Virus record (IMG/VR): IMGVR_UViG_3300037110_000087
Span: 243,125 to 307,124 of that record
Length of the DNA stretch: 64,000 nucleotides
Direction: 5' to 3' (one strand)
The position numbers and the translations under genes are program-made. The notes under the pieces are model-generated. The model was not told the DNA's origin. It made no database searches and saw only the letters and a program-made list of their open reading frames with translations. Shown here piece by piece: positions 4,914 through 64,000 of this stretch (positions are counted from its first letter, which is position 1; each line of letters starts with the position of its first letter).

Positions 4914-5222
4914 TTAGAACTCGATTTCATGTCCACCGCAAACGCCACAGATAGAATCATCCCGGCCCATTTCGAACCCATCTCCAGCGAAAGATCTCAG
5001 GGGAAGCCTGACCTCAAGGGTTCGCCCAGAAGTAATTTCGCCCAGCACTCCATCACCGAAGGTATCAGCGATTTCCTGGCATTTATCAGGATATTTCTTA
5101 AGCAAAGACATCCATGACAGCATGCTCATGGTTACAAATTCGACTCTGTAACCACCTCTATCGTAGGCATCCGCCTTAGCGATGATTTCATTGGGGCCAT
5201 ATTTTACTTCAAACTGATCCAT
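4914..5222 (-). CDS. hypothetical protein
   Basis: ORF directly upstream of actin-like gene. Confidence 0.65.
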   Translation of the reverse strand: MDQFEVKYGPNEIIAKADAYDRGGYRVEFVTMSMLSWMSLLKKYPDKCQEIADTFGDGVLGEITSGRTLEVRLPLRSFAGDGFEMGRDDSICGVCGGHEIEF

Positions 5223-5679
5223 TTGGTTCTCCTTTGGATTTTTTAAACTTAGCTTTGAGATCTGCTGCGGACATTCCCTTCTGTTTCGAACTGTCTACTT
5301 TAATATCACTCTCACTAACAGGTTCGAAACTCGGAACAAATACATCACCCGATGGTCCAGAAGGTTTAACCTCTGGTGTGGCTCCCACTACTACCACCTG
5401 CTGTGGCGGAGTGGCCTTAAGTGCACGAATCTCCTCCATCATTTTGGTCTGCATGATCAGCAGTTGTTCCATCATATTATTATCAGCTGGGATCTCAGGA
5501 GCATCTGGAATAAAATCAAACCTATAGATATTATTTAGTTCCTGCCAACCTTTGGGCAAAGAATTAACCGCAACGACAACAGAGTCACCAGGATTAAGAT
5601 AACTGCTAGCGAACCAGCAAGCTATCCCGCCTCCCTTTTGCACCTGATGGCTTATATTGGTTACTCTTACTTGTGTCAT
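5209..5679 (-). CDS. hypothetical protein with low-complexity C-terminus
   Basis: ORF in run; Pro/Val-rich linker and basic tail. Confidence 0.7.
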   Translation of the reverse strand: MTQVRVTNISHQVQKGGGIACWFASSYLNPGDSVVVAVNSLPKGWQELNNIYRFDFIPDAPEIPADNNMMEQLLIMQTKMMEEIRALKATPPQQVVVVGATPEVKPSGPSGDVFVPSFEPVSESDIKVDSSKQKGMSAADLKAKFKKSKGEPNGSV

Positions 5680-5686
5680 TAAACTC

Positions 5687-5956
5687 TCAAAGTTTCCAGT
5701 TATCCCACACCGGGATAACCTCTTCTGCGATAAACGCAGTTTTTATTTTAAACTGGTCTTCAAGAATTTTTTGAATCTGAGTAAAAACAAGGGTATCCTG
5801 GGCCTCTGATTTCGAGAAGTCAATTATTATCAGGTCTTCACAAATGACACAGAGGTCTTTTTTGAAATCAATTCGTATCGGCCATGTTGCTAGACCCAGA
5901 TTCAAGATCTCGTCCCGGTTGGAGTTCCTCTTGATTTTCTTGAACGCATTGATCAT
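5687..5956 (-). CDS. hypothetical protein
   Basis: ORF in run. Confidence 0.55.
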   Translation of the reverse strand: MINAFKKIKRNSNRDEILNLGLATWPIRIDFKKDLCVICEDLIIIDFSKSEAQDTLVFTQIQKILEDQFKIKTAFIAEEVIPVWDNWKL

Positions 5957-51595: not shown

Positions 51596-53194
51596 ATGTC
51601 CATCAATAACCGTAGAACTACTCCCCTAGTTCCCTCTGCCATCGCTGTGGCCCAGGCTACCGCCCACAAGAATCATATGGCTGGCAATAGCTGGGAAATT
51701 ACCCCTATCACCCGTCTGAAGTGCATGGCGAGTTCCTGCTTCTTCGGAGAGCCGACCTATTACAACCCCAAAGTGGCTAGCTATGGCCACTTCTACGAGG
51801 GCAGCTTTCTGGGCCAGACCATGTTTGGCAAGGAATGGCATGGTTTAAATCCTGCGCAGAAGTTGGAGAAGGCGATCGATGAGGCCCTCGATTATGATGC
51901 TGAGGCGACTCTCGATTACGCTTTCGAACTGCGTACTCAGTTGAACATCCGTGCCACCCCTCAGGTGATCGCGGTCCGTGCGGCTAATATGGTTTCCCTC
52001 AAGGGTCAGGGAATCCGCCAGTATGCACTGGCTACCATTCAGCGTCCAGATGATGCTGCCACTCAGTTCGCCTACCATGTCGCCAAGTATGGCAAGAACG
52101 CTCCCATTCCCAACGCTCTCAAGAAGGCGTGGCGTGAGTATCTGATCAAGTGCACCGAATATGACTTGGCCAAATACCAGCTGGCCAGCAAGGAAGTCAA
52201 GATGGTCGACCTAATCAATATGGTCCGGCCCAAGAGCGAAGCTATCGACAAGTTCATGAAGGGCACCCTGTCCAACACCGGCAAGACCTGGGAAGCCATC
52301 ATCAGTGGTGGTGGCAGGTGGGATGAAGCGGTTGAAGTGATGGGTCACATGGCTCTGCTGCGCAATTTGCGCAACTTCGTCGAGAAGAGTGATGAAACCA
52401 CTCAGCGTAAGGTTGCTGACAAGCTGGTTGCTACTGCAGCCAAGGGTCATCAGCTGCCTTTCCGCTACTGGTCTGCCTTTAACGCCCTAGTCGAAGGTGG
52501 ACGGAGAGCACCCGGTTTCATGCTGGATGCAGTCGAGAATGCCCTGCGTGTCTCTCTGGGCAATCTACCCCGATTGCAGGGTAACAGCCTAGTGCTGTCG
52601 GACAATTCCGGTAGCGCTCGTCATGCCTTCCAGAGCAAAATGGGTTCAGTCCAGATCTCCACCATCGGTAACCTGCTGGCTGCGATCGTCGGCAAGATCT
52701 CCGATAATGCCAGAATTGGGGTATTCGGTGACCGGCTGTCCTGTGTCGAATCCCGTAAGTCCAGTTCGGTGTTCGATGACCTGAAGACTCTGAATAACCT
52801 AGGCGAAGGAGTCGGCCAGGGAACTGAGAATGGCATCTGGCTGGCGCTCCATCAGGCTATCGCGGAACGCGAACATTGGGATAATATCTTCGTCTGCAGC
52901 GATATGCAAGCCGGTCATGGTGGGCTTTATGGTTGTGGCGTCATCCCCAGCGAATACCTGTGGCGTACCAACAACCAGGGCTATGGTGCGGCCAGCAGCC
53001 CGGTCACCATTGATGTTCCTTACATGCTGCACAAGTACCGGAAGATCAATCCCAATGTCAACGTGTTCCTGATCCAGACCGCTGGATACGAGGACACCAT
53101 CATCCCTGAATACTTCGATCGCACCTACGTGATCGGGGGATGGAGTGATGGGGTGATCCACTTCGCTGATCAGATGATCAAGCTGCGTCAATGA
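51596..53194 (+). CDS. Ro60/Rsr TROVE-vWA RNA-binding protein
   Basis: N.MAGNSW, FFGEPTYY, R..LNIR..P, IQRPDD, MALLRNLRN, QLPFRY..A, VLSDNSGS MIDAS, SDMQ. Confidence 0.9.
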   Translation: MSINNRRTTPLVPSAIAVAQATAHKNHMAGNSWEITPITRLKCMASSCFFGEPTYYNPKVASYGHFYEGSFLGQTMFGKEWHGLNPAQKLEKAIDEALDYDAEATLDYAFELRTQLNIRATPQVIAVRAANMVSLKGQGIRQYALATIQRPDDAATQFAYHVAKYGKNAPIPNALKKAWREYLIKCTEYDLAKYQLASKEVKMVDLINMVRPKSEAIDKFMKGTLSNTGKTWEAIISGGGRWDEAVEVMGHMALLRNLRNFVEKSDETTQRKVADKLVATAAKGHQLPFRYWSAFNALVEGGRRAPGFMLDAVENALRVSLGNLPRLQGNSLVLSDNSGSARHAFQSKMGSVQISTIGNLLAAIVGKISDNARIGVFGDRLSCVESRKSSSVFDDLKTLNNLGEGVGQGTENGIWLALHQAIAEREHWDNIFVCSDMQAGHGGLYGCGVIPSEYLWRTNNQGYGAASSPVTIDVPYMLHKYRKINPNVNVFLIQTAGYEDTIIPEYFDRTYVIGGWSDGVIHFADQMIKLRQ

Positions 53195-53472
53195 CCGAGA
53201 ACACCTGGGCATCCGTCAGGACTGTAGGGGAGATGATCGATTGGTTATCTACGCTTGATCGGTCAACTCCCTTCATTAGACAGACCCCTGGCCATTACTG
53301 TAACACTCGCAAGGCTGTTGCCCATGTTTACTTCAGCACTCAGGTCCAACTGACTGATGTTGGTAGGGTAGAGGGTGAACAATATGCTGGGGTCATCCCA
53401 AGTGGAGAACCAATCCCAGCAGTCCATATGTTCTTCGATACAGATTTCCGGGAGGAACATGTTAGACCTTGA
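53191..53472 (+). CDS. hypothetical protein
   Basis: ATGA overlap with the Ro60 stop. Confidence 0.6.
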   Translation: MTENTWASVRTVGEMIDWLSTLDRSTPFIRQTPGHYCNTRKAVAHVYFSTQVQLTDVGRVEGEQYAGVIPSGEPIPAVHMFFDTDFREEHVRP

Positions 53473-53623
53473 GGGGAATCCGATTAAACCTCCTCCTAAG
53501 TGCATTCACTGCAAGAAGACTGAAGGGGAGCACAACGCCAAGACTAGGGAATGCCCTGTCGGTCTAAAGACCCGGATTGGATATATCAGGTTCGGGCCAA
53601 CAGTTTTCGAAATTAAGAGTTAG
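53375..53623 (+). CDS. small zinc-binding protein (true start likely MLDLEG)
   Basis: CIHC...H...C. Confidence 0.5.
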   Translation: MNNMLGSSQVENQSQQSICSSIQISGRNMLDLEGNPIKPPPKCIHCKKTEGEHNAKTRECPVGLKTRIGYIRFGPTVFEIKS

Positions 53624-53653
53624 AAAAGAGGGGAGCTTCGGTTCCCCTCTTTT
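53624..53653. terminator. bidirectional intrinsic terminator
   Basis: AAAAGAGGGGAGC-TTCG-GTTCCCCTCTTTT. Confidence 0.88.
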
Positions 53654-53864
53654 CGTATAGTATAATAGAATTATCACTTGGGGATGTAATGAAGCTCAAG
53701 TTCAAAGCAGCGACAAAAATTAATATCACTAAGATCCCGACATTAAAGTTTTTAGACTTTTGGGCCGAAGGAGAGACTAAGGCCCTTGGTTACATCAATA
53801 TGCCAGTTGTAGAAAGGGATCTAGCCAGAACCATTCAGAGGGATAACTATCGTCTATTTCGAAG

Positions 53865-54209
53865 ATGACAATAGCTCTCTTGCGTGGACGGTTACGTGAG
53901 ATTGCTTCCTATTCCAAGGGTGTGTGGAAATGTCTGATCACTGAAACAACTGCTTTAGGTAATGGTATACCACCTAGAGGACAAATATTTTGTTTTAAAG
54001 AGGGAGATCACCATCCTGTCCCTGCAGGTTGGTGGATGGACTGGCCTGAGTCTCATTGGGAAATCTCTAAGGCTGAATACAATAGACTACCTGAGAAGGA
54101 ACGTGCTCTATTAGAGTGCAAGGAACAAATTCCGAAAGAGTATGATAGGCTCCGTGAGGAATTTTATCAACCTGAGGAACATGAACGGAAATGGTGGAGC
54201 AAGAAATGA
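53865..54209 (+). CDS. hypothetical protein
   Basis: ORF in run. Confidence 0.55.
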   Translation: MTIALLRGRLREIASYSKGVWKCLITETTALGNGIPPRGQIFCFKEGDHHPVPAGWWMDWPESHWEISKAEYNRLPEKERALLECKEQIPKEYDRLREEFYQPEEHERKWWSKK

Positions 54210-54589
54210 GTGCACTCTCTCCGATTCTCCGATTAGCCCAGGATAATACCCTGATATTCTGGTGTCCTGGCTGCAACAGATCCCATGGTATTAAATTTGG
54301 TAGTGGTCAATGGACCTGGAATGGTGATCCTATCAAACCAACTTTCTCCCCTAGCGTCCTGGTCACGAGTGGTCACTATTCAGATGGAAATAAAACAGAA
54401 TGCTGGTGCAATTTTGAAGCCAGATTTGGAGAGAAGTCTAGCTTTAAATGTTATAGATGTCATTCCTTTGTTGTGGATGGAATGATTCAGTTTCTGGGTG
54501 ATTGTACCCACGAACTAGTAGGTCAGACAGTACCTTTATTTCCTAAATGGTACAATGAAGAAGAGGGATATCACGACAACGTGCGTTAA
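54191..54589 (+). CDS. DUF6527-like protein
   Basis: FWCPGC..SH, W.WNGD...PTFSPSVL, CHSFV.DG.IQFLGDC.H. Confidence 0.75.
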   Translation: MVEQEMSALSPILRLAQDNTLIFWCPGCNRSHGIKFGSGQWTWNGDPIKPTFSPSVLVTSGHYSDGNKTECWCNFEARFGEKSSFKCYRCHSFVVDGMIQFLGDCTHELVGQTVPLFPKWYNEEEGYHDNVR

Positions 54590-54960
54590 CTGTTTCCCCA
54601 CACGCTGCAAGACAATCTGTAAAGGTTAATGGTAAAATAAAGATTCATTAAGGGCAAATTTTCATGATCAACTCTCTACCCAAACAATATTGCATGCCAA
54701 ATTCCATTGAATTTGGTCGTGGAATGCTTGTGTAAAGGGTCTTTCTGAATCTTTTTATGGAAAAGGCCCCTCGTCAAACAGGGGCCTCAACATTTCCGAC
54801 CCTGGTTCCTTAGATTAGTCCGCACAAATCGCAGAGCTACGAACTCTGAGAACGCCAGTTGAAATCTGGCAGGAACCACCACTGGAGCAAGTTGGATCAA
54901 ACAACTAGAAGTTAGAATAGATCCAAGGCAACAATCAAGGTTGAAGCCAAACAGAAGGGA

Positions 54961-54989
54961 TTGACAGAAACGAACAGTCAGGTTAAAAT
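54961..54989 (+). promoter_or_regulatory. sigma70-type promoter heading the ncRNA field
   Basis: TTGACA-17-TAAAAT. Confidence 0.8.
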
Positions 54990-55174
54990 AAAAGACAACC
55001 AACGTGATCATGGTCATATTGGGAATCCTTGGAAAATCAATAGCGTAATAAGTTTGTCGGGCGTTTTAGGACGCCTGAATGGTCCCACATCCTACGCGGA
55101 AGTGGGCAAGTCCATCGAGGCTGTATCCTCCTGTCGTGAGATAACGGGGCTAGTGGATTCAACAGCAAATATCA

Positions 55175-55279
55175 CCAACAGTAGTGATCGGAACGGTTAC
55201 TTCCCTACCAAACAAGAGAAAAACGGGTTCGCCCGTTGTCGTGGGTAAAACCACTCTCCGTTCCCCCTTTCTCTGTTGG
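55175..55279 (+). ncRNA. Y-RNA-like (Yrl-type) RNA, reduced core, copy 1
   Basis: CCAACAG/CTGTTGG outer stem, bulged nt, GGAACGG/CCGTTCC inner stem, GGTTACTTC motif, pyrimidine-rich 3' strand. Confidence 0.65.
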
Positions 55280-55291
55280 AAGCAATTCAGC

Positions 55292-55390
55292 GGCAGTAGT
55301 GATTGAAATGGTTACTTCGGATAAGCATCAGGTGTTGAGCCTGACTGGCGCGGTCGTCGAAGACCGCTACCCATTTCGCCTTTCTCTGTT
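55292..55390 (+). ncRNA. Y-RNA-like RNA, reduced core, copy 2
   Basis: GGCAG/CTGTT, GAAATGG/CCATTTC, GGTTACTTC. Confidence 0.65.
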
Positions 55391-55511
55391 AGCAACATCG
55401 AGGCTTGGCAATCGCTGAGCCTTAACTCCCTAGGGTAGTCAGGATTCAGTTCCTATCATCTTGTGTTGGAAGGGAGCTAGCAACGTAGAGTACACATAGC
55501 GTTGCAACAAT

Positions 55512-55589
55512 CGGCCTTTAGCGCAGTCTGGTTAGCGCGTCTCGTTTGGGACGAGAAGGTCCGGAGTTCGAATCTCCGAAGGCCGACCA
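55512..55589 (+). tRNA. tRNA-Pro(TGG)
   Basis: Full cloverleaf: CGGCCTT/AAGGCCG, TCTCG-TTTGGGA-CGAGA, GTTCGAATC, encoded CCA. Confidence 0.93.
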
Positions 55590-55639
55590 AGTTCGAATGG
55601 ATCTAGCTCCGACCATGTTATACTAAGGTAGGAGTTAGC

Positions 55640-56419
55640 ATGAAATATGAAGAATTGGGAAACAAAGACCAATACCTAGGGATGGTGACCCTAAGGTGTA
55701 CGACCTGCGAAAAGGAATTCGAACGTCAGGCAAAATACGTTCGATCTTCGATAAAGCTCCATCCGCAAGACAACATAGACTGTGGATGCAAGAATATCAG
55801 GAAGTGTTCCTTCTGTCAAAAATCATCACCTGAGGTAAGATTCACAAAGACTCACAGAGTCTGCGTTGATTGTAGGAAGACTTACAATCATGAATACTAT
55901 CAGGAGAACAAAGAAAAAGTGAATTCGGATAAAGTCTTGAGACAGACAAAGACTTACCGGGAGAACTTTGATCGGGTCAGCCAGTACAAAGAATCTCATT
56001 CCTGTGTTGACTGTGGTAGATTTTTCCCGGCTTGTGCGATGGATTGGGATCATCAAAGAGATAAACTACATAATATTTCTGAGATGGTCAAATTTGCGGC
56101 TTGGGATCTGATTGAAGCTGAGATTGCTAAGTGTGAGCTGATCTGTGCGGTTTGTCACAGGATCAGGACCGCGAAAGAAGGCTCTTACCATAGGGTTAGG
56201 GAGCAAAAACCGAAGGCGCGATCCACCAAGGGCTTCCGTCCTCCTAAAGACGAGTTGGTGAAGCTCGTGCAAACATTCTCAATTTCTGCGATCGGTCGCC
56301 AGTTTGGTGTGAGCGACACGATGGTTAGAAAGTGGTGCAAGATCTTTGACATCGACTACAAATTACTCAGCAAGTTCTCGTTGCAGAACATCTGCCCTGA
56401 GGTTTATGGTCCAGAATAA
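55640..56419 (+). mobile_element. HNH homing endonuclease in ncRNA field
   Basis: CVDCG...MDWDH...EIAKCELICAVCHRIRT. Confidence 0.85.
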
Positions 56420-56634
56420 GGACTCACTTTTACGCCCGGCAGTCGAACAAAGGTGAACAACCTCGACATGGGAAAAGCCGAATCTACGTAGCCCTTTGAG
56501 TCCTTCCAATGCGTTGATGGCCTAAATGCCATCGTTCAACGAAACGGTGCTGTGACACTAGCGCCTACATTCACCCTTCTTGAAGGGGGCAGCGGATAAT
56601 AGAATCCGAGTCGGATTGTGTAACCGACACCAAT

Positions 56635-56746
56635 GGGGGAGTAGCTCAGCATTGCATAGAGCGCTGCAGATCAGTCCAGATATCCATGGTTCCGTCTGGA
56701 GGAAATCCGCAGAGGGCGGCGGTATCAAATCCTCTCTCCCCTACCA
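56635..56746 (+). ncRNA. tRNA-like RNA with 41-nt expanded anticodon loop
   Basis: GGGGGAG/CTCCCCT-A-CCA, GCTC/GAGC D-arm, CTGC/GCAG stem, internal TCCAGA/TCTGGA hairpin, degenerate T-arm. Confidence 0.7.
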
Positions 56747-57358
56747 ATAGGTCCAAGTCGAACCTGATGATCGCACATCGAATCGTCTTCCCGTAGTCGG
56801 CACACCCAAGTAATGCGAGAAGTGGTGAAAAGTCGAAACAAAATTCCAGTGGGTCAAGTGGAACGAATTGGTGAAATGCCATAGTATAAATAGCGTGACG
56901 GTCGACCGTCACGCTCCTATCTTGGTTGTGCACAACAACCCATAGTTCTGAGTCCGATCTCGATCTAATGTGGATAAAGGATCTTGCTAGTCCTCCACCA
57001 TCGGGAGAATGCGAGGCCGCTGCAGCCGTTTTGCGCTCAGATAAACAACTTCCAGTGAGACAGGCCCAATGGGTTGAATAACTGGTTGCATAAATAACGG
57101 GACATGCCATTCCCTTTGTCTAAAATCGACCCTGGTTAAGGTAGGTGAGCCTTCCAGGTTCTTTGACATCGCAGATTCCATGAAGCCTATCAGCGAGGGC
57201 AGTCGACAGAGTAATGGAATCTATAGCATAGGTGACACCAATGCCCACTCCAATTTGTCGGTATCGGTTGGGTTAGTGGATTACGAATCCGGGCCTTCTA
57301 GTCGGGCTTAGTATACTGAGTCCTGGGTTAATGCTAGGTGAATCACCCAGGGCGCATA

Positions 57359-57435
57359 GCGGGGGTAGCTCAGAGAAAGAGCAGCAGGGACAATATCCTT
57401 GAAGGTCGGAGGTTCAAGTCCTTCCCCCCGCACCA
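57359..57435 (+). ncRNA. tRNA-like RNA with non-canonical anticodon loop (ACAATAT)
   Basis: GCGGGGG/CCCCCGC-A-CCA, normal D and T arms; no U33. Confidence 0.75.
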
Positions 57436-57492
57436 TTTAAATCAATACCCCCACAAGCGGAGAAGAAATTCTGTGATGCGAGTGGGACCCCT

Positions 57493-57571
57493 GGCGGGGT
57501 AGCTCAGATGCATTAAGAGTACCGGCTAATTAAGCTGGAAGTCAGGGTCTTGCAAACCCTCCCCGCCACCA
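57493..57571 (+). ncRNA. tRNA-like RNA (loop TAATTAA, T-loop CTTGCAA)
   Basis: GGCGGGG/CCCCGCC-A-CCA; CCGGC/GCTGG; altered T-loop. Confidence 0.7.
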
Positions 57572-57579
57572 GTACAAGT

Positions 57580-57662
57580 CTTTCAGCAGTGATTGGAACG
57601 GTTACTTCAAATGTGATTGAGCCGTGGGGCAACCCACTCTCCGTTTCGCTTTTCTCTGAAAG
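57580..57662 (+). ncRNA. Y-RNA-like RNA, minimal core, copy 3
   Basis: CTTTCAG/CTGAAAG, GGAACGG/CCGTTTC, GGTTACTTC. Confidence 0.65.
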
Positions 57663-57725
57663 GTTATTAGGTCCTTGCCATGGAGGCAAGAAGGAAACTT
57701 GGGCATGCACTCCCAACCTATCATA

Positions 57726-57796
57726 GGGCGGGTACCTCAGATGCGATAAGAGGTCCTCCAAGGAAGTCGGTGTGTTGCAAGCACTCCCGCCCACCA
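57726..57796 (+). ncRNA. tRNA-like RNA with vestigial anticodon arm
   Basis: GGGCGGG/CCCGCCC-A-CCA; CCTC/GAGG D-arm; CCT-CCA-AGG mini arm; T-loop GTTGCAA. Confidence 0.7.
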
Positions 57797-57839
57797 ATCT
57801 CAAAATCCTGACCCTGTAGTCTTGCTCCTATAACGAGCG

Positions 57840-58390
57840 CATAAGGCTGGACTGGGCATTGGCACCGGAAACCGCTATAGCAGCTAGGGCCGGAAACGCA
57901 AATGTCATAGCAGGGTCGCCCATCAAATCTCCATGGTGGTGGAGATCAACGTGGCGATTCACAAGAACGAGGGACGGTGAGGGAACGCAGAACGTAATCC
58001 TGTGCACAAGGGTTCTGACTAATCCCAAGAAACGGAGGCATTCTAGATATGCTTCATGGAATAGTTTCCTTCCAGCCACGTGTAATTCTTAGGATACAGA
58101 ACCCGGTAACGGGCTGAAACGAATCGAAGTGGCTTGTGCAAAGATCTCATCCGTAGGGGTGGGGGAGCCGGGAAAGGGTGAAGCGGAAGGTACAACCGCA
58201 GAAGCAACTCCCACGAGCAGAGAGGGCACTCTCACGGAGCCACTATCCTGAGAAGCAAATCCATCCCTGAGAACGGCAATTCAAGGGGAGAGAAACCCAA
58301 GTCCTGTCCTTGCCGGGATAAAACACACGCCACCCTGAGAAGGTGGAAATTCCTAAATAGGGCTGTAGGAGATGAGCGGTGTGAGGGTAT
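57840..58390 (+). ncRNA. candidate large structured RNA
   Basis: No credible ORF; many hairpins (CCCG-GTAA-CGGG, GAGAG-GGCA-CTCTC, CCACC-CTGAGAA-GGTGG); CTGAGAA three times. Confidence 0.45.
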
Positions 58391-58399
58391 ACAATCAAA

Positions 58400-58570
58400 C
58401 GGCGGATAGCTCAGTTGGAGTTATCAGAGCGCCACATCAAGGAAAAGTAGAAGAAAACTTGGGGCAAAAGCTGAGTGAATTCGCGACGATCTCACTGAGT
58501 AGCCTAGAGCAGAGTATTCTAACCAGTACTAGTGTGGAGGGCGGTGGTTCAAATCCATCTCCGTCGACCA
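58400..58570 (+). ncRNA. tRNA-like RNA with 96-nt anticodon-loop insert
   Basis: CGGCGGA/TCCGTCG-A-CCA; CCACA/TGTGG; GGTGG-TTCAAAT-CCATC. Confidence 0.75.
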
Positions 58571-58746
58571 TTTCGGTAGGTAGTTTAAACAGAACGCGGT
58601 GTGCAGGAAGACGAGGAACGAAGCACCAGTACAGCACGTGTAAACTGGCGAGTTGAACCGGGGGCCACTCAGTCTTTTTAGGACTGGTGACGCAAACAAA
58701 CACATTGAGATTGAGGGTTTGAGCCTCATCTACCGTCCAGTTCATT

Positions 58747-58827
58747 GGTGGAGTACCTCAGGGACAGGCAGAGGGACCTCGTAGCACGAGAGGAAAGTCG
58801 GTGGTTCAATCCCATCCTCCACCACCA
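58747..58827 (+). ncRNA. tRNA-like RNA with aberrant anticodon arm
   Basis: GGTGGAG/CTCCACC-A-CCA; CTCGT-AGC-ACGAG 3-nt loop; T-arm intact. Confidence 0.7.
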
Positions 58828-59006
58828 ATGTCAAGAACGGTAATCAATCCGTCGCCTTGTGATCCGGGTATGTTGGATCACCCCTCCACTCTGGGGAAAG
58901 AATCCGGGTAATGGTGGATCAACCGGAAGGCAAAGCAACAGATGCGGCAAAATTGAAAAGGCCCCGCGAGGAAGTCGACTCTAAATGTGCTGTTGCAAAG
59001 TTCAAG

Positions 59007-59145
59007 TTCGGCAGTGATTGTCACAGTTACTCCATGCTAAGGACGAGGATTTGGGATTCGAATTCCCATCGGGGCCTCCAATACAACCATTGGTCCCGTA
59101 GCTCAGGGGTAGAGCGCGTAAAACACTGTGTCGCCTTTCTCCGAA
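59007..59145 (+). ncRNA. YrlA-like Y RNA with circularly permuted tRNA domain
   Basis: TTCGG/CCGAA stem with bulged C, CACAG/CTGTG, GTTACTCC; then T-arm TGGGA-TTCGAAT-TCCCA, loop-closed acceptor CGGGGCC/GGTCCCG, D-arm GCTC-AGGGGTA-GAGC. Confidence 0.8.
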
Positions 59146-59150
59146 TCAAT

Positions 59151-59223
59151 TGGCCCCTCGTCTAATGGAGGACAAGTCCCACACCGGGAAGAAACGCGGG
59201 TTAGAATCCAGCGGGGCCAACCA
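59151..59223 (+). ncRNA. tRNA-like RNA with 5-nt anticodon loop
   Basis: TGGCCCC/GGGGCCA-A-CCA; TCCC-ACACC-GGGA; T-loop TTAGAAT. Confidence 0.65.
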
Positions 59224-59242
59224 AATCTCATAGGAGCGCATC

Positions 59243-59554
59243 GTGCAAATCGATAATCTACCAACCAAAGTTGATCTCAGGGACAGATTCTTGTTTCCTC
59301 CCATTTATGATCAAGGTGAACTCGGATGTAGTGTATGTTGTTCTTCTGCAGCGATCTTGGACATGACGAAAATTAATCAGATGATCGGCAAGAAAGTCCG
59401 AAAGGATAAGAAGCCATTCAAATCAACATTTAAGGTCAACACCGTCAAAGGTGTGGTGGACCATCCCATTCTGCATGTGCCCTGTTTCACCTTCGAAGAG
59501 GATGATTCCTACGTTGAGTGCAGACGGTGCATCGCAGTCGAAGATTCCCAGTAA
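59243..59554 (+). pseudogene. papain-like (C1) peptidase N-terminal fragment
   Basis: LPTKVDLR...PIYDQGELG; remainder of the domain absent. Confidence 0.5.
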
Positions 59555-60057
59555 AAGGTAGTATTGAGGAACGTACCAATAAGTGGCTATGAAGAGCTAC
59601 AGGTGTTCCAGGTGGGTGTACAGTCCTACCACCTTCTTACCTCTTCACAGGGCTGGGAATACGATCGGCTAAGTAGTACCCGAATGCGAACCTTAGCTGA
59701 AGGGGCTTATACTCCTAAAAATAGTTTTAAGATTTTCTAAAAGGAGAAAAAGAGATAATAAAAGATAAGAGATGTACTTGGTATGCAGCTTGGCATTATT
59801 GTATTTATCTTCCATTAGATGATGACAAACTTTATCAAATAGCAATTCCGTATCATGGATATTTTGAACACTTACAAAGACTTGAAATAACTAACGAACG
59901 TAATGCAGATGATAATGATTTGTCTTTCAATTATTAGAATATAGCTTGGATGACTCTACTCGTAAGAATGAGTCGAAAATGTTGGTAACAGCATATAAGT
60001 TCGTAGCTCCAAGCTATTAAAAAATTCAAATTAAGATTCCGATTAGTAAGAATATGA

Positions 60058-60597
60058 CTATTTACAGAGCTTGTTAGCACAAGCCTGGAATTTTCTTTGG
60101 TCATTGTTCTGAATTCCTTCCAGCTTACTCTCTCCATGAATGGGTTCATAATGGAAGATTCCATTTAATTCGAAGGCTAGCTTCAGTGATGGAATAAAAA
60201 TGTCTAGTTCGGAATTGATGGTATCTTTCCGGTTGAAATGAATCTTAAGATTTGGGTACAATAAAGTAATTTGCTCTTCAAGCCATTTCTCTAGTTTGGA
60301 TCGAGTGGTTCCATGAGTCTTATGAAGGTTATTATATCTAGTCCCGCAAGAAATTGAGCAGAACAATCTACCTGATTTCGATTTCTTGAGATCTTTGGGA
60401 TTTTTGGTGATCAGTTCATTACATTGTGAGCATCTAGTGGCAAATGTAGTTGAATAATGGATATAATAACAATCCACACAACAGAAGACCTTTGATTGAT
60501 TATATCCATGATCTCTCTCAAATGGTCTGTTACATTGACAACAAACTAAGTTTACCATTTTTGTCATTTCAGCTCCTATTACTATGGTATCATGCAA
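60058..60597 (-). mobile_element. PD-(D/E)xK-type homing endonuclease with zinc-finger repeats, C-terminally short
   Basis: CxxC...FCSxxC repeats; ELDIFIP..KLAFELNG.FHY. Confidence 0.7.
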
Positions 60598-60658
60598 TCC
60601 AGGGATTCGATTTTCGGTATTCGAGTCCCTCCATTCCTCGTTATTTTGGGTTCGTATT

Positions 60659-60734
60659 GGATCGGAAGCTATATTGGTTTAGCGCTGGCGTGAAGTCCCA
60701 GAGGATGCAGGTTCGAAGCCTGTCCGATCCACCA
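60659..60734 (+). tRNA. tRNA-Phe(GAA)
   Basis: GGATCGG/CCGATCC-A-CCA; loop GTGAAGT; C31-C39 mismatch. Confidence 0.75.
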
Positions 60735-60769
60735 GTTTTGTTCTCAAAACTATTTAACTTGGAGAGTAT

Positions 60770-61063
60770 ATGAAAGGTGCTATTGTTTCTAATGAACCTG
60801 AATGCACGACAAAGAAGCCATTAATTGCGGCCTTTGAGGATGTTGAATCAACAATTGGGGAAACTGAACGGCTCGTGAGTTTGGTTGAGAGGACCTTTAA
60901 TCTACTGCTTGAAATGGTTCCTGGTGGAGAGGAAGAGGAAGGTCTGGGAAAATCGATCGATCGAAATCCAATCCCAATTGTGCAACGTTTGAATATGCTT
61001 GATGGTCGGTTGAGAACAATCAATAAGGACCTATCAGATATCATCGACCGTAGCCACATCTAA
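60770..61063 (+). CDS. hypothetical coiled-coil protein
   Basis: GGAG RBS. Confidence 0.6.
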   Translation: MKGAIVSNEPECTTKKPLIAAFEDVESTIGETERLVSLVERTFNLLLEMVPGGEEEEGLGKSIDRNPIPIVQRLNMLDGRLRTINKDLSDIIDRSHI

Positions 61064-61150
61064 TCGTTGACCAGAAGGGTGACTGGTTAACCTGTAGGAA
61101 GGGCAGCAAGGCAGCGATCTTGTCCCCTGGTCCGGAGCAATCCGGAGTCG

Positions 61151-61188
61151 AGCCAACCTGGGCACTAGTGATAGCCAACCTGGGCACT
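61151..61188 (+). repeat. 16-bp direct repeat
   Basis: AGCCAACCTGGGCACT at 61151-61166 and 61173-61188. Confidence 0.9.
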
Positions 61189-61300
61189 CGTCATTGAACA
61201 CCAGCGCTAATGGGCAAATGGCCGAAGGACGTTCGCGTCCAACAGGTTGAATTAACAACGAATTGGCGCTCCATTAAAAATCTCATGGAGGGGTAACCCG

Positions 61301-61567
61301 ATGAAGTGTGTACAGAAGATCATCAACAAAGAACCCAAGGAAGTCATCATCAAGCGCGTGTCCAACGAACAGGCCGAAAAACTGGTCAGTGAAGGTTGGG
61401 CCTTCGCCTCCAAGAAGGATTGGAAGGCTGCACCCAATACAACCTGGGTCAAGTCCACTACCACTCCCAATGCCATCAAGGAAGCCAAGCAGCGTAGGAC
61501 GGAGAAGCGTAAAACTCCGACTCCGCCCAGGGAGACTGGTTCGCGCCGGTCCAAGGCAACGAAATAA
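61301..61567 (+). CDS. small basic protein
   Basis: GGAGGG RBS; Lys/Arg-rich tail. Confidence 0.7.
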   Translation: MKCVQKIINKEPKEVIIKRVSNEQAEKLVSEGWAFASKKDWKAAPNTTWVKSTTTPNAIKEAKQRRTEKRKTPTPPRETGSRRSKATK

Positions 61568-61686
61568 AGGTTAGAACAGTTTCAGAACTAGTGGTTGAGA
61601 AGTCACTAGATGTTGAGTCGGGGTAAGCCACAGACATGGCCCGGTAATCTAGCCGGAATACAGTTTCTGCGATCTTCGACAAGTTA

Positions 61687-61774
61687 GTAAGGGCTAATGA
61701 CCCATACAAAGGTAGAGCGGCCTCTATGTTAGGCTTGCCGGGGGTCATGATCCGGTGACTAAAACGACTCTACC
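61687..61774 (+). ncRNA. 88-nt structured repeat, copy A
   Basis: GTAAGGG..ATGACCCAT.CAAAGGTAGAGCGGCC...CGACTCTACC. Confidence 0.6.
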
Positions 61775-61984
61775 TCCAATCGACTCCCTGCGGCGGTTCA
61801 ATTTAACCCGCCCTACTGAGCGATGATATGCATACTCGGCGGCGACCGACTTCCGGATGGCCCAGTGAAGTTTCAGTCCGGAGATTTTGAGAAGTCCACC
61901 CACTTAAGACCGTATCCAAGTCTGTAATTGTTTCTCTTTGGGGATCCGACAGATAAGGCTAGTGGATGAAACGGTTTCCTTTTG

Positions 61985-62072
61985 GTAAGGGTCGATGACC
62001 CATGCAAAGGTAGAGCGGCCACCATGCTTGGCCCTCTGGAGGTTTGCTCCGGAGAAAAACAACGACTCTACC
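61985..62072 (+). ncRNA. 88-nt structured repeat, copy B
   Basis: Same motif with compensatory changes. Confidence 0.6.
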
Positions 62073-62479
62073 ATCCATTTCGTGCCTTTCTACCCCGACC
62101 AAGGATGATTGACACGACTCTATGGGGATGAACAGATTCGACAGGTTTATGCCCTGAGTGTAGCGCAGGTAGAGGAAACCGATGGCCTCTCAAAAATCGG
62201 TAAAAACACAACTGCCGAAGACTTTCTTCTCCAGGCTGCGTAAGCAGCATCCTCTAAGCGATCGTTTGGTAGCTTAGTTGTAAGGAATCTCAAGGATGGT
62301 TCGCCTACCGAGAGAGTTCACAAACTAGATTCCGATGAAATGTTCTAGTCGGAATGACACAAAGGACATAAGTCCTCGATTAGAGTTGTCCGGTTTACTC
62401 TACAGAGGTCACTAGAAACGGACTAAACCTGTGAATGAACTACCTTAGGAATTTTCTTGGACAGGACTAGCATAAGTCC

Positions 62480-63043
62480 TCATCTCCACCTTGTTTGGCT
62501 AGTGCGTCCGTCCCAATCACCAAACAGACCGAGCGCATTAGCCTTCCTCATGCCTTCACAGACCACGAGCCAAGCGTTATAAGGCATAATTCCCCTGGTC
62601 ACATTACATCGGTAACAAGCAGGGACCACGTTGCCCTTCGTGTGACCTTTAGAATTGTCAATTCTATCTAATGTCATATTGGTGATAAGGTTGTCACCAC
62701 AGTAAAAGCAAGGATTAGAAATTTGTGCCAAAATAAATTTGACATCCAGATCCGAGACCCTTTTCTTCTTCTTGTCCGCTGATTTACAATATTTGAGAAT
62801 TAAGGCAGCGCGGACTTCTAAATTGGTTGACCTAGTTTCAATCTTCCTCTGAATTGATCTTCTTTGCGCTGCTTCTGGTGTAGTTTTCATTTTCTTGTAG
62901 GATAATCTTCTCAGATTGTCGCAGGTCTTACAAAGAGAGCGAAAGTATCTGACTCCTTTGATGGTTTGGGCGTAAGGCTTAACTTCGGGATATTTCTTAT
63001 TGCAACCAGAACACTGCCAAGATTCTAAGGTGATTCTTTCCAT
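62480..63043 (-). mobile_element. HNH homing endonuclease
   Basis: CFYCGD...TLDRIDNSKGH...NVVPACYRCN. Confidence 0.85.
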
Positions 63044-63622
63044 TGGTGGACCTCTCCATTAAGTATAACATTTCACTAGTCCACCAACGGTTATAATATC
63101 TTTAGGAGTAGTGATGAACAAAATTAGAGTACAAAATCTTTTGACCAGAATTTCTAGGCTCGTTCAGCAGGAACGATTGGACAAACCATCCTTGAGGCAC
63201 CGTTCCATGCCTAACCCGCAGACCCCTCAAGAGTATGCAAGACGGGAGATTGGCTTAGAGGTAGCCATTCTTTAAAGAGTGACAAGGACGATCCATAAGG
63301 GGGTAATCGGTGCGGGGCGACACCCTTGATCCGTTAGCCGAACTCAGTATAAGTCCAGGGGAAGAATAGCGGACAGTCTTCAACAAGTAGTGGGTATTAC
63401 ACCGGTATCCAGTTAAGTCGAACGGGAAGTGTTCAGAACCAATCGGCAGTTGAAGGACCCTTAGAGTCTTTGGTGTAATAACACACCTTCTTGCAGACCG
63501 CTGGTATGGAGCGGAATAAAAGAGTCCATAACAAAGCAGATTCCGTAGTCGTCATCTGAAAAGACCCTCGACTGGAGCGATCAAAGTCTGCCATGTTGGT
63601 TGATCATCTAGACCAATTTCTT

Positions 63623-63735
63623 TGGCTCATACCTCAGCTGGTAGAGGGCTCGCCTGAATCGTTATCGTAGTTTCGGACTGCGAATAACCTGTAGTAAGCG
63701 AGATGTCGGTGGTTCGACTCCACCTGGGCCAACCA
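63623..63735 (+). tRNA. tRNA (Ile-like body) with 44-nt anticodon loop containing an intron-like hairpin
   Basis: TGGCTCA/TGGGCCA-A-CCA; CTCGC/GCGAG; GGTGG-TTCGACT-CCACC; insert GTTAT-CGTAG..CTGCG-A-ATAAC. Confidence 0.75.
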
Positions 63736-63857
63736 GACCCCGCTACGCCTCTGCTAAGAACCTGCATCCTTCACCGGACCAGACCCACTAGCATGCGCAC
63801 CAAGAGAAGCCGGTAACGGAGATCGCCAGGAAGCAAGGCCTGGAATGGGGGGAATCA

Positions 63858-64000
63858 ATCGCTAGTGACCGACTGGTAAGGTCGTCCCTGATGGGGACGT
63901 AAATGCGCGGGTTCGAGTCCCGCTCTTGAAGGTAACTTCGGGATAGCTCAGGTGGTAGAGCCGTCGTGGACGTTAAAATGTGGGTTCAAATCCTGCCTAG
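63858..64000 (+). ncRNA. double tRNA-like element, truncated by window end
   Basis: D1-AC1-T1, acceptor hairpin TCTTGAA-GGTAAC-TTCGGGA, then D2-AC2-T2. Confidence 0.6.

What the first reader, a model, noticed from the sequence alone, without database searches (positions are those of the whole stretch)
55175..57662. Three reduced Y-RNA paralogs that keep the putative Ro-binding stem but replace the tRNA domain
Seen: copies at 55175, 55292 and 57580 share (C)AG-Y-AGTGATYGRAAYGGTTACTTC...CC.TTYC.CYTTTCTCTG, with compensatory changes in the outer stem (CCAACAG/CTGTTGG, GGCAG/CTGTT, CTTTCAG/CTGAAAG) and inner stem (GGAACGG/CCGTTCC vs GAAATGG/CCATTTC). Each has a different apical domain, and the same frame encloses the 59007 RNA. 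Inference: a modular set of Y RNAs giving one Ro60 different partners, or acting as gates or decoys.
Basis: partly seen in the sequence, partly recalled or inferred. Interest (0 to 1): 0.78.

Follow-up and report, generated by a model that had tools for sequence, protein, structure and literature searches.

The report
Short Y RNAs beside phage Ro60
A 307-kb peat phage carries, just downstream of its Ro60 gene, three short RNAs and one tRNA-like RNA that share one conserved stem, and the same stem recurs in arrays next to Ro60 genes in dozens of other phages, so these are very probably Ro60-binding Y RNAs of a variant type that Rfam does not detect.

Summary
The 21-nt 5' arm occurs exactly four times in the window and nowhere else in the 307-kb phage genome, at 55183, 55298, 57588 and 59013. 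A covariance model built from the three short copies alone recovers the fourth, 59005-59147 (36 bits, E=4e-7).

A Ro60/TROVE gene lies 2-6 kb upstream on the same strand (51596-53194).

The frame defines a large RNA family:
- A second model found 165 matches in the window plus 79 viral Ro60 loci, 164 of them on the Ro60 strand. Of the best 150, 99 lie within 1 kb upstream of the gene.
- Cultured Bacillus phage G has six copies.
- Both helices covary strongly. A closing G-C pair followed by UACUUC is 95-100% conserved.
- That motif sits where YrlA carries its proposed Ro60-contact motif, GNCGAA.
- Of 135 distinct members, 77 are short, and 76 of those lack tRNA-like motifs. The window's copies are therefore the common form.

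Peat metatranscriptome contigs cover the tRNA-like copy and the 3' half of the 57580 copy. None covers the 55175/55290 pair.

Verdict: probable Ro60-binding Y RNAs, a new sequence variant of a known kind and analogous to YrlB, Yrn2 and phiLo Yrl. Ro60 binding, partner switching and "replacement" of a tRNA domain remain untested.

The parts
51596..53194 (+). Ro60 / TROVE-domain protein gene (532 aa)
   Evidence: Pfam TROVE, E=1.4e-8. Matches the solved Thermus phage phiLo Ro60 structures 9KOP/9L5Y, E=8.7e-12. Has 79 viral homolog loci and is 35.6% identical to Bacillus phage G gp540.
54961..54989 (+). Best sigma-70-like promoter match upstream of Y1/Y2 (TTGACA-17-TAAAAT, 11 of 12)
   Evidence: Consensus scan only; function not shown.
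55175..55279 (+). Y1: short Y-RNA-like copy, 105 nt. The apical domain has a UUCG-loop hairpin and a GUGG/CCAC hairpin.
   Evidence: R2 54 bits, E=6e-11. Fold -35.2 kcal/mol, z=-3.4. No T- or D-arm motif. No Rfam hit.
55290..55392 (+). Y2: short Y-RNA-like copy, about 100 nt, 11-12 nt after Y1. The apical domain has two unrelated hairpins.
   Evidence: R2 45.5 bits, E=1.4e-8. Fold. No T- or D-arm motif.
57580..57662 (+). Y3: shortest copy, 83 nt. The apical domain has a GCAA-loop hairpin. It begins 8 nt after a tRNA-like gene that ends in CCACCA.
   Evidence: R2 61.1 bits, E=7e-13. RNA-seq contig X4 covers 57625-57771, and contig X12 begins at 57663, one base after the 3' end of Y3.
59005..59147 (+). 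Y4: the same frame enclosing a YrlA-type tRNA-like module (T-arm, stem-loop, D-arm)
   Evidence: R1, which was not trained on it, gives 36.2 bits, E=4e-7. R2 45.5 bits. Rfam YrlA 21.2 bits on 59043-59121, below the gathering score of 69. RNA-seq contig X12 covers 59010-59155.

Best explanation
Y1, Y2 and Y3 are small structured non-coding RNAs of a Y-RNA family that travels with a phage-type Ro60 gene. Their 5' and 3' ends pair into a bulged helix: an outer stem, then AG.GR opposite U.UCUC, then an inner stem closed by an almost invariant G-C pair. An invariant single-stranded UACUUC follows on the 5' side. This conserved frame is most likely the docking site for the phage Ro60 ring encoded at 51596-53194. 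The variable apical part is the module that differs between paralogs: small hairpins in Y1-Y3 and a tRNA-like module in Y4. They are probably transcribed with the neighbouring tRNA and tRNA-like genes and cut out of a precursor. By analogy with Deinococcus, Salmonella and Thermus phage phiLo, the Ro60-Y RNA particles would act on structured RNA during infection, probably together with a host enzyme such as PNPase, because the phage encodes neither PNPase nor RtcB. Shown here: the RNAs' structure, their family membership, their linkage to Ro60 genes, and partial transcription. Inferred: Ro60 binding, processing, and the effector.
For: There are exactly four copies, all on the Ro60 strand within 6 kb downstream of the gene. 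Model R2 over the window plus 79 viral TROVE loci (1.52 Mb) gives 165 matches at E<=0.1, of which 164 are on the TROVE strand. Of the best 150, 99 lie within 1 kb upstream of the TROVE gene, and loci carry up to 8 copies. Control: 49 loci picked up by the bare sequence pattern (403 kb) gave strong hits only in six loci, and all six come from TROVE-encoding contigs. Covariation on 135 distinct sequences: 86.9% of cells are paired, against 56.9% when shuffled and at most 50.5% when slid; 870 cells change on both sides, against 291 when shuffled; 16 of 19 pairs change on both sides. One pair is G-U in 103 of 135 sequences, which fixes the strand. The closing G-C pair and UACUUC are 95-100% conserved. 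Rfam YrlA aligns over its full length (31 bits) to a family member; there the frame's inner stem lies on the YrlA stem, and GUUACUUC lies on the 'CgaAUGCu' stretch that carries the proposed Rsr-binding motif GNCGAAN0-1G (PMC4201824). Cultured Bacillus phage G has six copies; four are tandem in the unannotated gap just upstream of its TROVE gene, and one carries a YrlA-type module. Bacterial/MAG TROVE loci gave 28 of 28 hits on the TROVE strand, nearly all just upstream of the gene. Metatranscriptome contigs, all in the 99-100% identity class and with no differing letters, cover 59010-59155 and 57625-57771, and none covers the coding stretches laid. [quoted passage not shown]
Against: There is no binding evidence: complex prediction returned no fold. 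The literal Ro60-contact motifs GGUCCGA, GNCGAAN0-1G and CGAA are absent. No Rfam family reaches its gathering score on Y1-Y3, and Y4 gets only 21 of the 69 bits needed for YrlA. Y1 and Y2 were not seen in the four RNA runs. The contig 57625-57771 runs across the 3' end of Y3, so a discrete end is not shown, and contigs carry no strand information. In this phage the RNAs lie downstream of Ro60 among tRNAs, not in the usual upstream position. Y3 is 4.4 kb and Y4 5.8 kb from the gene, outside the 4-kb criterion of Chen et al. Two phages with related Ro60 proteins, Desulfovibrio phage SRB7757 and phiLo, have no R2 match.
Confidence: 0.75

Rival explanations
1. The frames are processing cassettes, not protein ligands. 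The long terminal stems would be cleavage sites (of the RNase III or RNase E kind) that help cut the polycistronic tRNA/tRNA-like island into pieces, and the linkage to Ro60 only reflects a shared RNA-metabolism island.
For: In the window the copies sit between tRNA and tRNA-like genes; Y3 starts 8 nt after one. An RNA contig starts exactly after the 3' end of Y3. Some relatives enclose complete tRNA bodies.
Against: More than half of the members are short and carry nothing beyond a small apical loop or hairpin, some with only 8-16 nt. The most conserved element is an unpaired hexamer, UACUUC, which a double-strand-specific nuclease would not need. Most copies elsewhere lie directly upstream of the TROVE gene, not in tRNA islands.
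Confidence: 0.08
2. They are functional small RNAs that bind a different protein, or act on their own, for example as decoys for host tRNA-directed nucleases or as regulators of the Ro60 mRNA. Ro60 would then be only a genomic neighbour.
For: The known Ro60 motifs are absent. Conserved single-stranded UACUUC could equally be a site for another protein or for base pairing. 99 of 150 copies lie in what could be the 5' leader of the TROVE mRNA.
Against: The linkage to TROVE genes holds across proteins only 30-50% identical and in unrelated genomic surroundings. 39 of 150 copies, and all four here, are not in the leader. The frame aligns with the Ro-binding end of YrlA.
Confidence: 0.1
3. Y1-Y3 are decaying duplicates of the tRNA-like Y4 that have lost their tRNA module and have no function.
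For: The three short copies are each other's closest relatives, 78-80% identical over frame columns, so they arose by duplication within this lineage.
Against: All invariant family positions are intact in all three, and their stems keep pairing through compensatory changes. Their R2 scores (45-61 bits) are as high as or higher than Y4's. Short members are the majority class across the family.
Confidence: 0.04

Closest known systems
YrlA (Rfam RF02553; Salmonella, Mycobacterium smegmatis, mycobacteriophages; Chen et al. 2014, PMC4201824)
   Same: Encoded near Ro60 on the same strand. It has a terminal stem closed by a G-C pair, followed by a conserved 5'-side single-stranded motif. Y4 and other long family members carry the same permuted T-arm ... 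D-arm module. The YrlA model aligns end to end with a family member at 31 bits.
   Different: The motif is G-(U)UACUUC instead of GNCGAAN0-1G. There is an extra conserved bulged helix (AG.GR / U.UCUC) outside the stem that YrlA models. No member tested reaches the gathering score of 69 bits. Y1-Y3 have no tRNA-like module.
YrlB (Salmonella, M. smegmatis) and Yrn2 (Deinococcus): second, hairpin-type Y RNAs
   Same: They are additional Ro60-bound RNAs encoded beside the tRNA-like Y RNA, shorter and lacking the full tRNA module. This is the same logic of several Y RNAs for one Ro60 (PMC4201824).
   Different: No sequence homology was shown. Those RNAs were found by immunoprecipitation, whereas these are predicted. 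Here the short form is multi-copy, with up to 8 per locus in relatives.
Yrl1/Yrl2 of Thermus phage phiLo (PMC12135203)
   Same: Phage-encoded hairpin Y-like RNAs next to a phage Ro60. They were shown to bind that Ro60 and host PNPase. The window's Ro60 matches the phiLo structure.
   Different: The phiLo RNAs carry a CGAA motif and lie upstream of Ro60. Model R2 finds nothing in the phiLo locus. The Ro60 proteins are only about 24% identical.
Metazoan Y RNAs (Rfam RF00019)
   Same: Size of 80-130 nt. The paired 5' and 3' ends form a bulged conserved helix, and the apical region varies between paralogs.
   Different: No GGUCCGA motif, no Rfam match, and a different transcription and processing context.
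Unannotated copies in Bacillus phage G (NC_023719, about 406.7-407.2 kb, about 405.2 kb and about 412.8 kb)
   Same: Same family by model R2 (32-44 bits). Same genome layout: TROVE gene, then a tRNA island, then tmRNA.
   Different: Four of its copies are tandem directly upstream of the TROVE gene. It is AT-rich. It is a cultured phage, so it can be tested at the bench.

Membership tests
Y RNA (functional class: RNA bound by Ro60) | Encoded close to a Ro60/TROVE gene on the same strand (Chen et al. 2014 used 4 kb or less) | tested here: met
   The TROVE ORF ends at 53194. Y1 and Y2 start about 2.0-2.1 kb downstream on the + strand. Y3 is at 4.4 kb and Y4 at 5.8 kb, beyond 4 kb but on the same strand with no other copy in the genome.
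Y RNA (functional class: RNA bound by Ro60) | 5' and 3' ends pair into a long, bulged, conserved stem; size about 80-130 nt | tested here: met
   Folds. Covariation of both helices on 135 sequences. Sizes are 105, about 100 and 83 nt.
Y RNA (functional class: RNA bound by Ro60) | Known Ro60-contact motif on the 5' strand (GGUCCGA, GNCGAAN0-1G or CGAA) | tested here: not met
   The copies read GAUCGGAACGG, GAUUGAAAUGG and GAUUGGAACGG followed by UUACUUC. The family consensus has G-(U)UACUUC at the position of the YrlA motif.
Y RNA (functional class: RNA bound by Ro60) | Physically binds Ro60 | not testable with these tools
   The complex-prediction job was not folded and gives no evidence either way.
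YrlA, Rfam RF02553 | Score at or above the gathering threshold of 69 bits | tested here: not met
   No hit on Y1-Y3. Y4 scores 21.2 bits. Relatives score 36 bits or less.
YrlA, Rfam RF02553 | tRNA-like module with T-arm and D-arm | tested here: not met
   No T-loop or D-arm motif in Y1-Y3. The module is present in Y4.
YrlB/Yrn2-type hairpin Y RNA | [quoted passage not shown] | tested here: inconclusive
   The copies are encoded beside Y4 and lack the tRNA module. However, the apical domains of Y1-Y3 are 1-2 small hairpins, not a single pyrimidine-rich loop, and binding is untested.
Ro60-linked 'UACUUC' RNA family defined here (models R1 and R2) | Significant full-length match to the covariance model, with the invariant G-C closing pair, UACUUC and UCUC | tested here: met
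   61.1, 54.0 and 45.5 bits, E from 7e-13 to 1.4e-8. R2 was trained on relatives only (A4), not on the window.

The most novel reading that the evidence does not exclude
The window's copies belong to a Y-RNA subfamily that neither Rfam nor the papers I could read describe. It is specific to a phage-type Ro60 clade and is marked by an invariant G-C/UACUUC element and an extra AG.GR/UCUC bulged helix. Its members form arrays of 2-8 paralogs whose apical slot holds anything from an 8-nt loop to a whole tRNA body, in either the canonical or the permuted arm order. Under this reading the frame is a universal Ro60 adaptor, and phages swap cargo modules to direct one Ro60 ring at different host or phage RNAs and enzymes.
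Probability: 0.45. Interest if true: 0.75.

Novelty: new variant of a known kind. Interest (0 to 1): 0.6.

Why it matters
Ro60 and Y RNAs are conserved from bacteria to humans, but only a handful of bacterial and phage Y RNAs have been characterised. Most predicted ones are the tRNA-like YrlA type.

This analysis gives a covariance-model-defined family of about 190 matches. Their recognition element differs from every published Ro60 motif, and their short, tRNA-less members outnumber the tRNA-like ones.

That provides a natural series of paralogs with the same frame and different modules. Such a series can be used to ask what the Y RNA module does, and which nucleotides Ro60 reads.

Bacillus phage G is a cultured phage in which this can be tested directly.

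The result also shows that Rfam's YrlA model misses this branch, so phage and metagenome annotation under-reports Y RNAs.

Tried and rejected
- Rfam at gathering and at E-value thresholds: nothing on Y1-Y3.
- Megablast of the region against GenBank phages: no match.
- Bare-pattern scan of viral contigs: 49 hits, about the number my own estimate expects by chance. Only those in TROVE-encoding contigs were real.
- MAFFT alignment of all four copies misaligned the 3' arm of Y4, so the model was built from the three short copies.
- Complex prediction of Ro60 with Y3: not folded, so no evidence.
- A specific pattern scan of metagenome contigs, meant to find close orthologs for apical-domain covariation, gave only one further family member and no ortholog. 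Conservation of the apical hairpins therefore could not be tested.
- A possible fifth copy at 61960 (D2) was rejected: R2 with filters off finds nothing there.
- The Rfam YrlA hit at 63906-63961 looks like the T-arm of one tRNA next to the D-arm of the next tRNA, not a Y RNA.
- The supplementary tables of Chen et al. 2014 and the 2020 Annual Review are not held. I therefore could not check whether the phage G copies were listed there.
- No RtcB and no PNPase-type domain in the phage genome.
Full report
**Setting**

The window is the last 64 kb of a 307-kb IMG/VR virus record. CheckV estimates it at 98% complete. It comes from peat metagenomes.

Positions 54.6-64 kb form a dense non-coding RNA island with tRNAs, tRNA-like genes carrying long inserts, and a tmRNA.

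Just upstream, at 51596-53194 on the + strand, is a 532-aa ORF with a TROVE domain (Pfam E=1.4e-8). It matches the solved Ro60 of Thermus phage phiLo (9KOP/9L5Y, E=8.7e-12).

**Observation**

The same frame encloses 59005/59007-59145/59147 (Y4).

- The 21-nt 5' arm pattern matches with no mismatch at exactly these four places. The remaining three window matches need three mismatches each, and 0 of 100 shuffles reach 7 matches.
- The rest of the genome has no match with fewer than three mismatches.
- The 3' arm matches exactly at the four expected places.
- The minimum-free-energy folds pair the ends of all four copies.
- Only short non-ATG ORFs overlap the copies.
- A covariance model built from Y1-Y3 alone (R1) recovers Y4 at 36.2 bits, E=4e-7.
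- The broader model R2 finds four and only four copies in the genome. With filters off, the next-best match in 53200-64000 scores 8.7 bits.

**What it is: comparative evidence**

The Ro60 protein and two relatives (alignment A3) retrieved 79 viral loci that encode a related TROVE protein.

- R1 found 45 matches in them, all on the TROVE strand.
- R2 was built from those 45 matches, with no window sequence. Over the window plus the 79 loci (1.52 Mb, both strands) it found 165 matches at E<=0.1, and 164 are on the TROVE strand.
- Of the best 150 matches, 99 lie within 1 kb upstream of the TROVE gene. 55 of the 80 sources are represented, with up to 8 copies per locus. Lengths run from 65 to 237 nt, with the mode at 70-90.
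- All 18 loci that have a TROVE protein at least 43% identical to the query, and that include upstream sequence, have at least one copy.

As a specificity control I searched the 49 loci that the bare sequence pattern had pulled from the viral collection. By my own estimate that is about the number expected by chance. Strong R2 hits occurred in only six of them, and all six come from contigs that encode a TROVE protein.

The family also occurs elsewhere:

- Cultured Bacillus phage G has six copies. Four are tandem in the unannotated 1-kb gap directly upstream of its TROVE gene gp540, one carries a YrlA-type tRNA-like module, and one lies in the downstream tRNA island.
- Bacterial and MAG contigs with related TROVE genes gave 28 of 28 hits on the TROVE strand, nearly all just upstream of the gene.

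**Structure**

On 135 distinct sequences:

| Measure | Observed | Shuffled | Slid by 1-3 columns |
|---|---|---|---|
| Cells forming a standard pair | 86.9% | 56.9% | at most 50.5% |
| Cells changed on both sides | 870 | 291 | at most 249 |

- 16 of 19 pairs show double changes, most with four to six pair types.
- The alignment was fitted to the model, which favours the structure, but the margin is large.
- One pair is G-U in 103 of 135 sequences, which fixes the transcribed strand.

The family consensus runs as follows:

1. A variable outer stem.
2. G-N-A-G-Y-G-R on the 5' side, opposite U-N-U-UCUC on the 3' side.
3. A variable inner stem closed by a G-C pair that is 99% conserved.
4. Unpaired (U)UACUUC, each base 95-100% conserved.
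5. The variable apical part, which in many members ends in an A-rich stretch before the 3' strand.

**Link to known Y RNAs**

No Rfam family reaches its threshold on any copy. However, the Rfam YrlA model aligns end to end (31 bits) with a long family member. In that alignment the frame's inner stem lies on YrlA's 'cggCga/ucGccg' stem, and GUUACUUC lies on 'AAUGCu'.

That stretch contains GNCGAAN0-1G, the motif that Chen et al. proposed as the Rsr (Ro60) recognition site (PMC4201824). The frame is therefore positionally equivalent to the Ro60-binding end of YrlA but has a different sequence. It also carries an extra conserved bulged helix outside the part YrlA models.

Y4 and several long relatives carry the permuted T-arm ... 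D-arm module typical of YrlA.

**Are the short copies unusual?**

No. Of the 135 distinct members, 77 are 110 nt or shorter, and 76 of those have no T-loop or D-arm motif. Of the 58 longer ones, 44 do.

The window's three short copies are each other's nearest relatives, at 78-80% identity over frame columns. They therefore arose by duplication within this lineage. Y1 looks like Y3 with an added A-rich stretch and UUCG hairpin.

The data do not show that a tRNA domain was 'replaced'. The short form may equally be the ancestral or default one.

**Transcription**

Four peat metatranscriptome runs hold contigs on this stretch, all in the 99-100% identity class and with no differing letters.

- One contig covers 59010-59155, nearly the whole of Y4.
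- One covers 57625-57771, the 3' half of Y3 running into the next gene.
- One starts at 57663, the base after Y3's predicted 3' end.
- Others cover neighbouring tRNA-like RNAs.
- None covers the coding stretches laid (53200-54660 and 55640-56417).
- None covers Y1 or Y2, but none covers the canonical tRNA-Pro either, so that absence says little.

These are assembler contigs without strand information. They show presence in RNA libraries, not discrete ends.

The best promoter-like site on the + strand lies at 54961-54989, about 190 nt before Y1. No intrinsic terminator on the + strand follows the copies. Together with the tight spacing to tRNA-like genes, this points to co-transcription and processing, as reported for M. 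smegmatis YrlA and YrlB (PMC4201824).

**Mechanism**

The best-supported reading is that Y1-Y3 are Ro60-binding Y RNAs. The conserved frame docks on the phage Ro60, and the apical module varies between paralogs.

The phage genome has no PNPase-type domain and no RtcB. Any effector would therefore come from the host, as reported for phage phiLo, whose Ro60 and hairpin Yrl RNAs assemble with host PNPase (PMC12135203).

Shown here: the structure, the family, the linkage to Ro60 genes, and partial presence in RNA. Inferred: Ro60 binding, processing, partners, and any gating or decoy role. The complex-prediction job was not folded and is not evidence.

**Rivals**

- Processing cassettes for the tRNA island. 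This is unlikely because most members carry no cargo, the best-conserved element is single-stranded, and elsewhere the copies sit upstream of Ro60 rather than among tRNAs.
- A ligand of another protein, or a leader element of the Ro60 mRNA. This is not excluded. However, the linkage survives wide divergence and different surroundings, and all four copies here lie outside any leader.
- Dead duplicates. This is contradicted by intact invariant positions, compensatory changes and high model scores.

**Novelty**

Several points are already known:

- Several Y RNAs can serve one Ro60.
- Hairpin-type Y RNAs without a tRNA module exist (YrlB, Yrn2).
- Phage-encoded Ro60 with Y-like RNAs has been described in mycobacteriophages, phage G, CcrColossus and phiLo (PMC4201824, PMC12135203, PMC7824862).

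What appears new, within the limits of the literature I could read:

- This sequence variant (the UACUUC motif and the extra bulged helix).
- Its breadth.
- Its arrangement in arrays.
- The predominance of short members.

I rate it a new variant of a known kind, of solid interest to Ro60 and Y RNA specialists and to phage RNA biology.

Noticed in passing
window 54600-64000: Dense non-coding RNA island downstream of Ro60. It holds canonical tRNAs (Arg 54804, Pro 55512, Ile 57359, Cys 58747, Phe 60659), tRNA-like genes with long inserts (about 56636-56745; 58400-58572 with an insert of about 95 nt; 63623-63732 with a 40-nt insert), a tmRNA at 62124-62491 (86 bits), and cysteine-rich ORFs that look like homing endonucleases (55640-56419, 60058-60597 on the minus strand, 62480-63043 on the minus strand). 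Of these, only 55640-56419 was scanned against Pfam, and it matched only a weak HTH_28 hit below the family's cut-off. Bacillus phage G has the same order: TROVE gene, tRNA island, tmRNA.
   Followed up: partly
window 61684-61745 and 61982-62043: Two 62-nt repeats, 77% identical, just upstream of the tmRNA. They look like paralogous unknown structured RNAs. The second is preceded by a sequence resembling the Y 5' arm (61960-61979), but the covariance model rejects it.
   Followed up: partly
window 63906-63961: The best Rfam YrlA hit in the genome (28 bits, below threshold) appears to be the T-arm of one tRNA-like gene next to the D-arm of the following one, which the contig end cuts off. It is probably a false YrlA.
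   Followed up: partly
L004 9015-9144 and 9552-9684: In a related phage the same Y frame encloses tRNA bodies in the canonical D-anticodon-T order. One is a full-length tRNA-model match at 49.9 bits. This differs from the permuted T...D order of YrlA, window Y4 and the phage G copy. The apical slot therefore accepts tRNA modules in either order.
   Followed up: partly
window 56418-56710, 57063-57292, 57837-58093, 58857-59055: Metatranscriptome contigs cover further unannotated stretches of the island that have no Rfam match. These are likely additional unknown small RNAs or precursor segments.
   Followed up: no
L144 (Bacillus phage G NC_023719, record about 405190-405350, 406670-407175 and 412775-412840): Six unannotated members of the family in a cultured jumbo phage. 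Four are tandem in the 1-kb gap before the TROVE gene gp540.
   Followed up: yes
L169 (Bacillus sp. Brlt_9, 743-kb contig) 5104-5767: Four tandem family members directly upstream of a TROVE gene on a large bacterial contig. This is possibly a prophage, or a chromosomal Ro60 locus that uses this Y RNA type.
   Followed up: no
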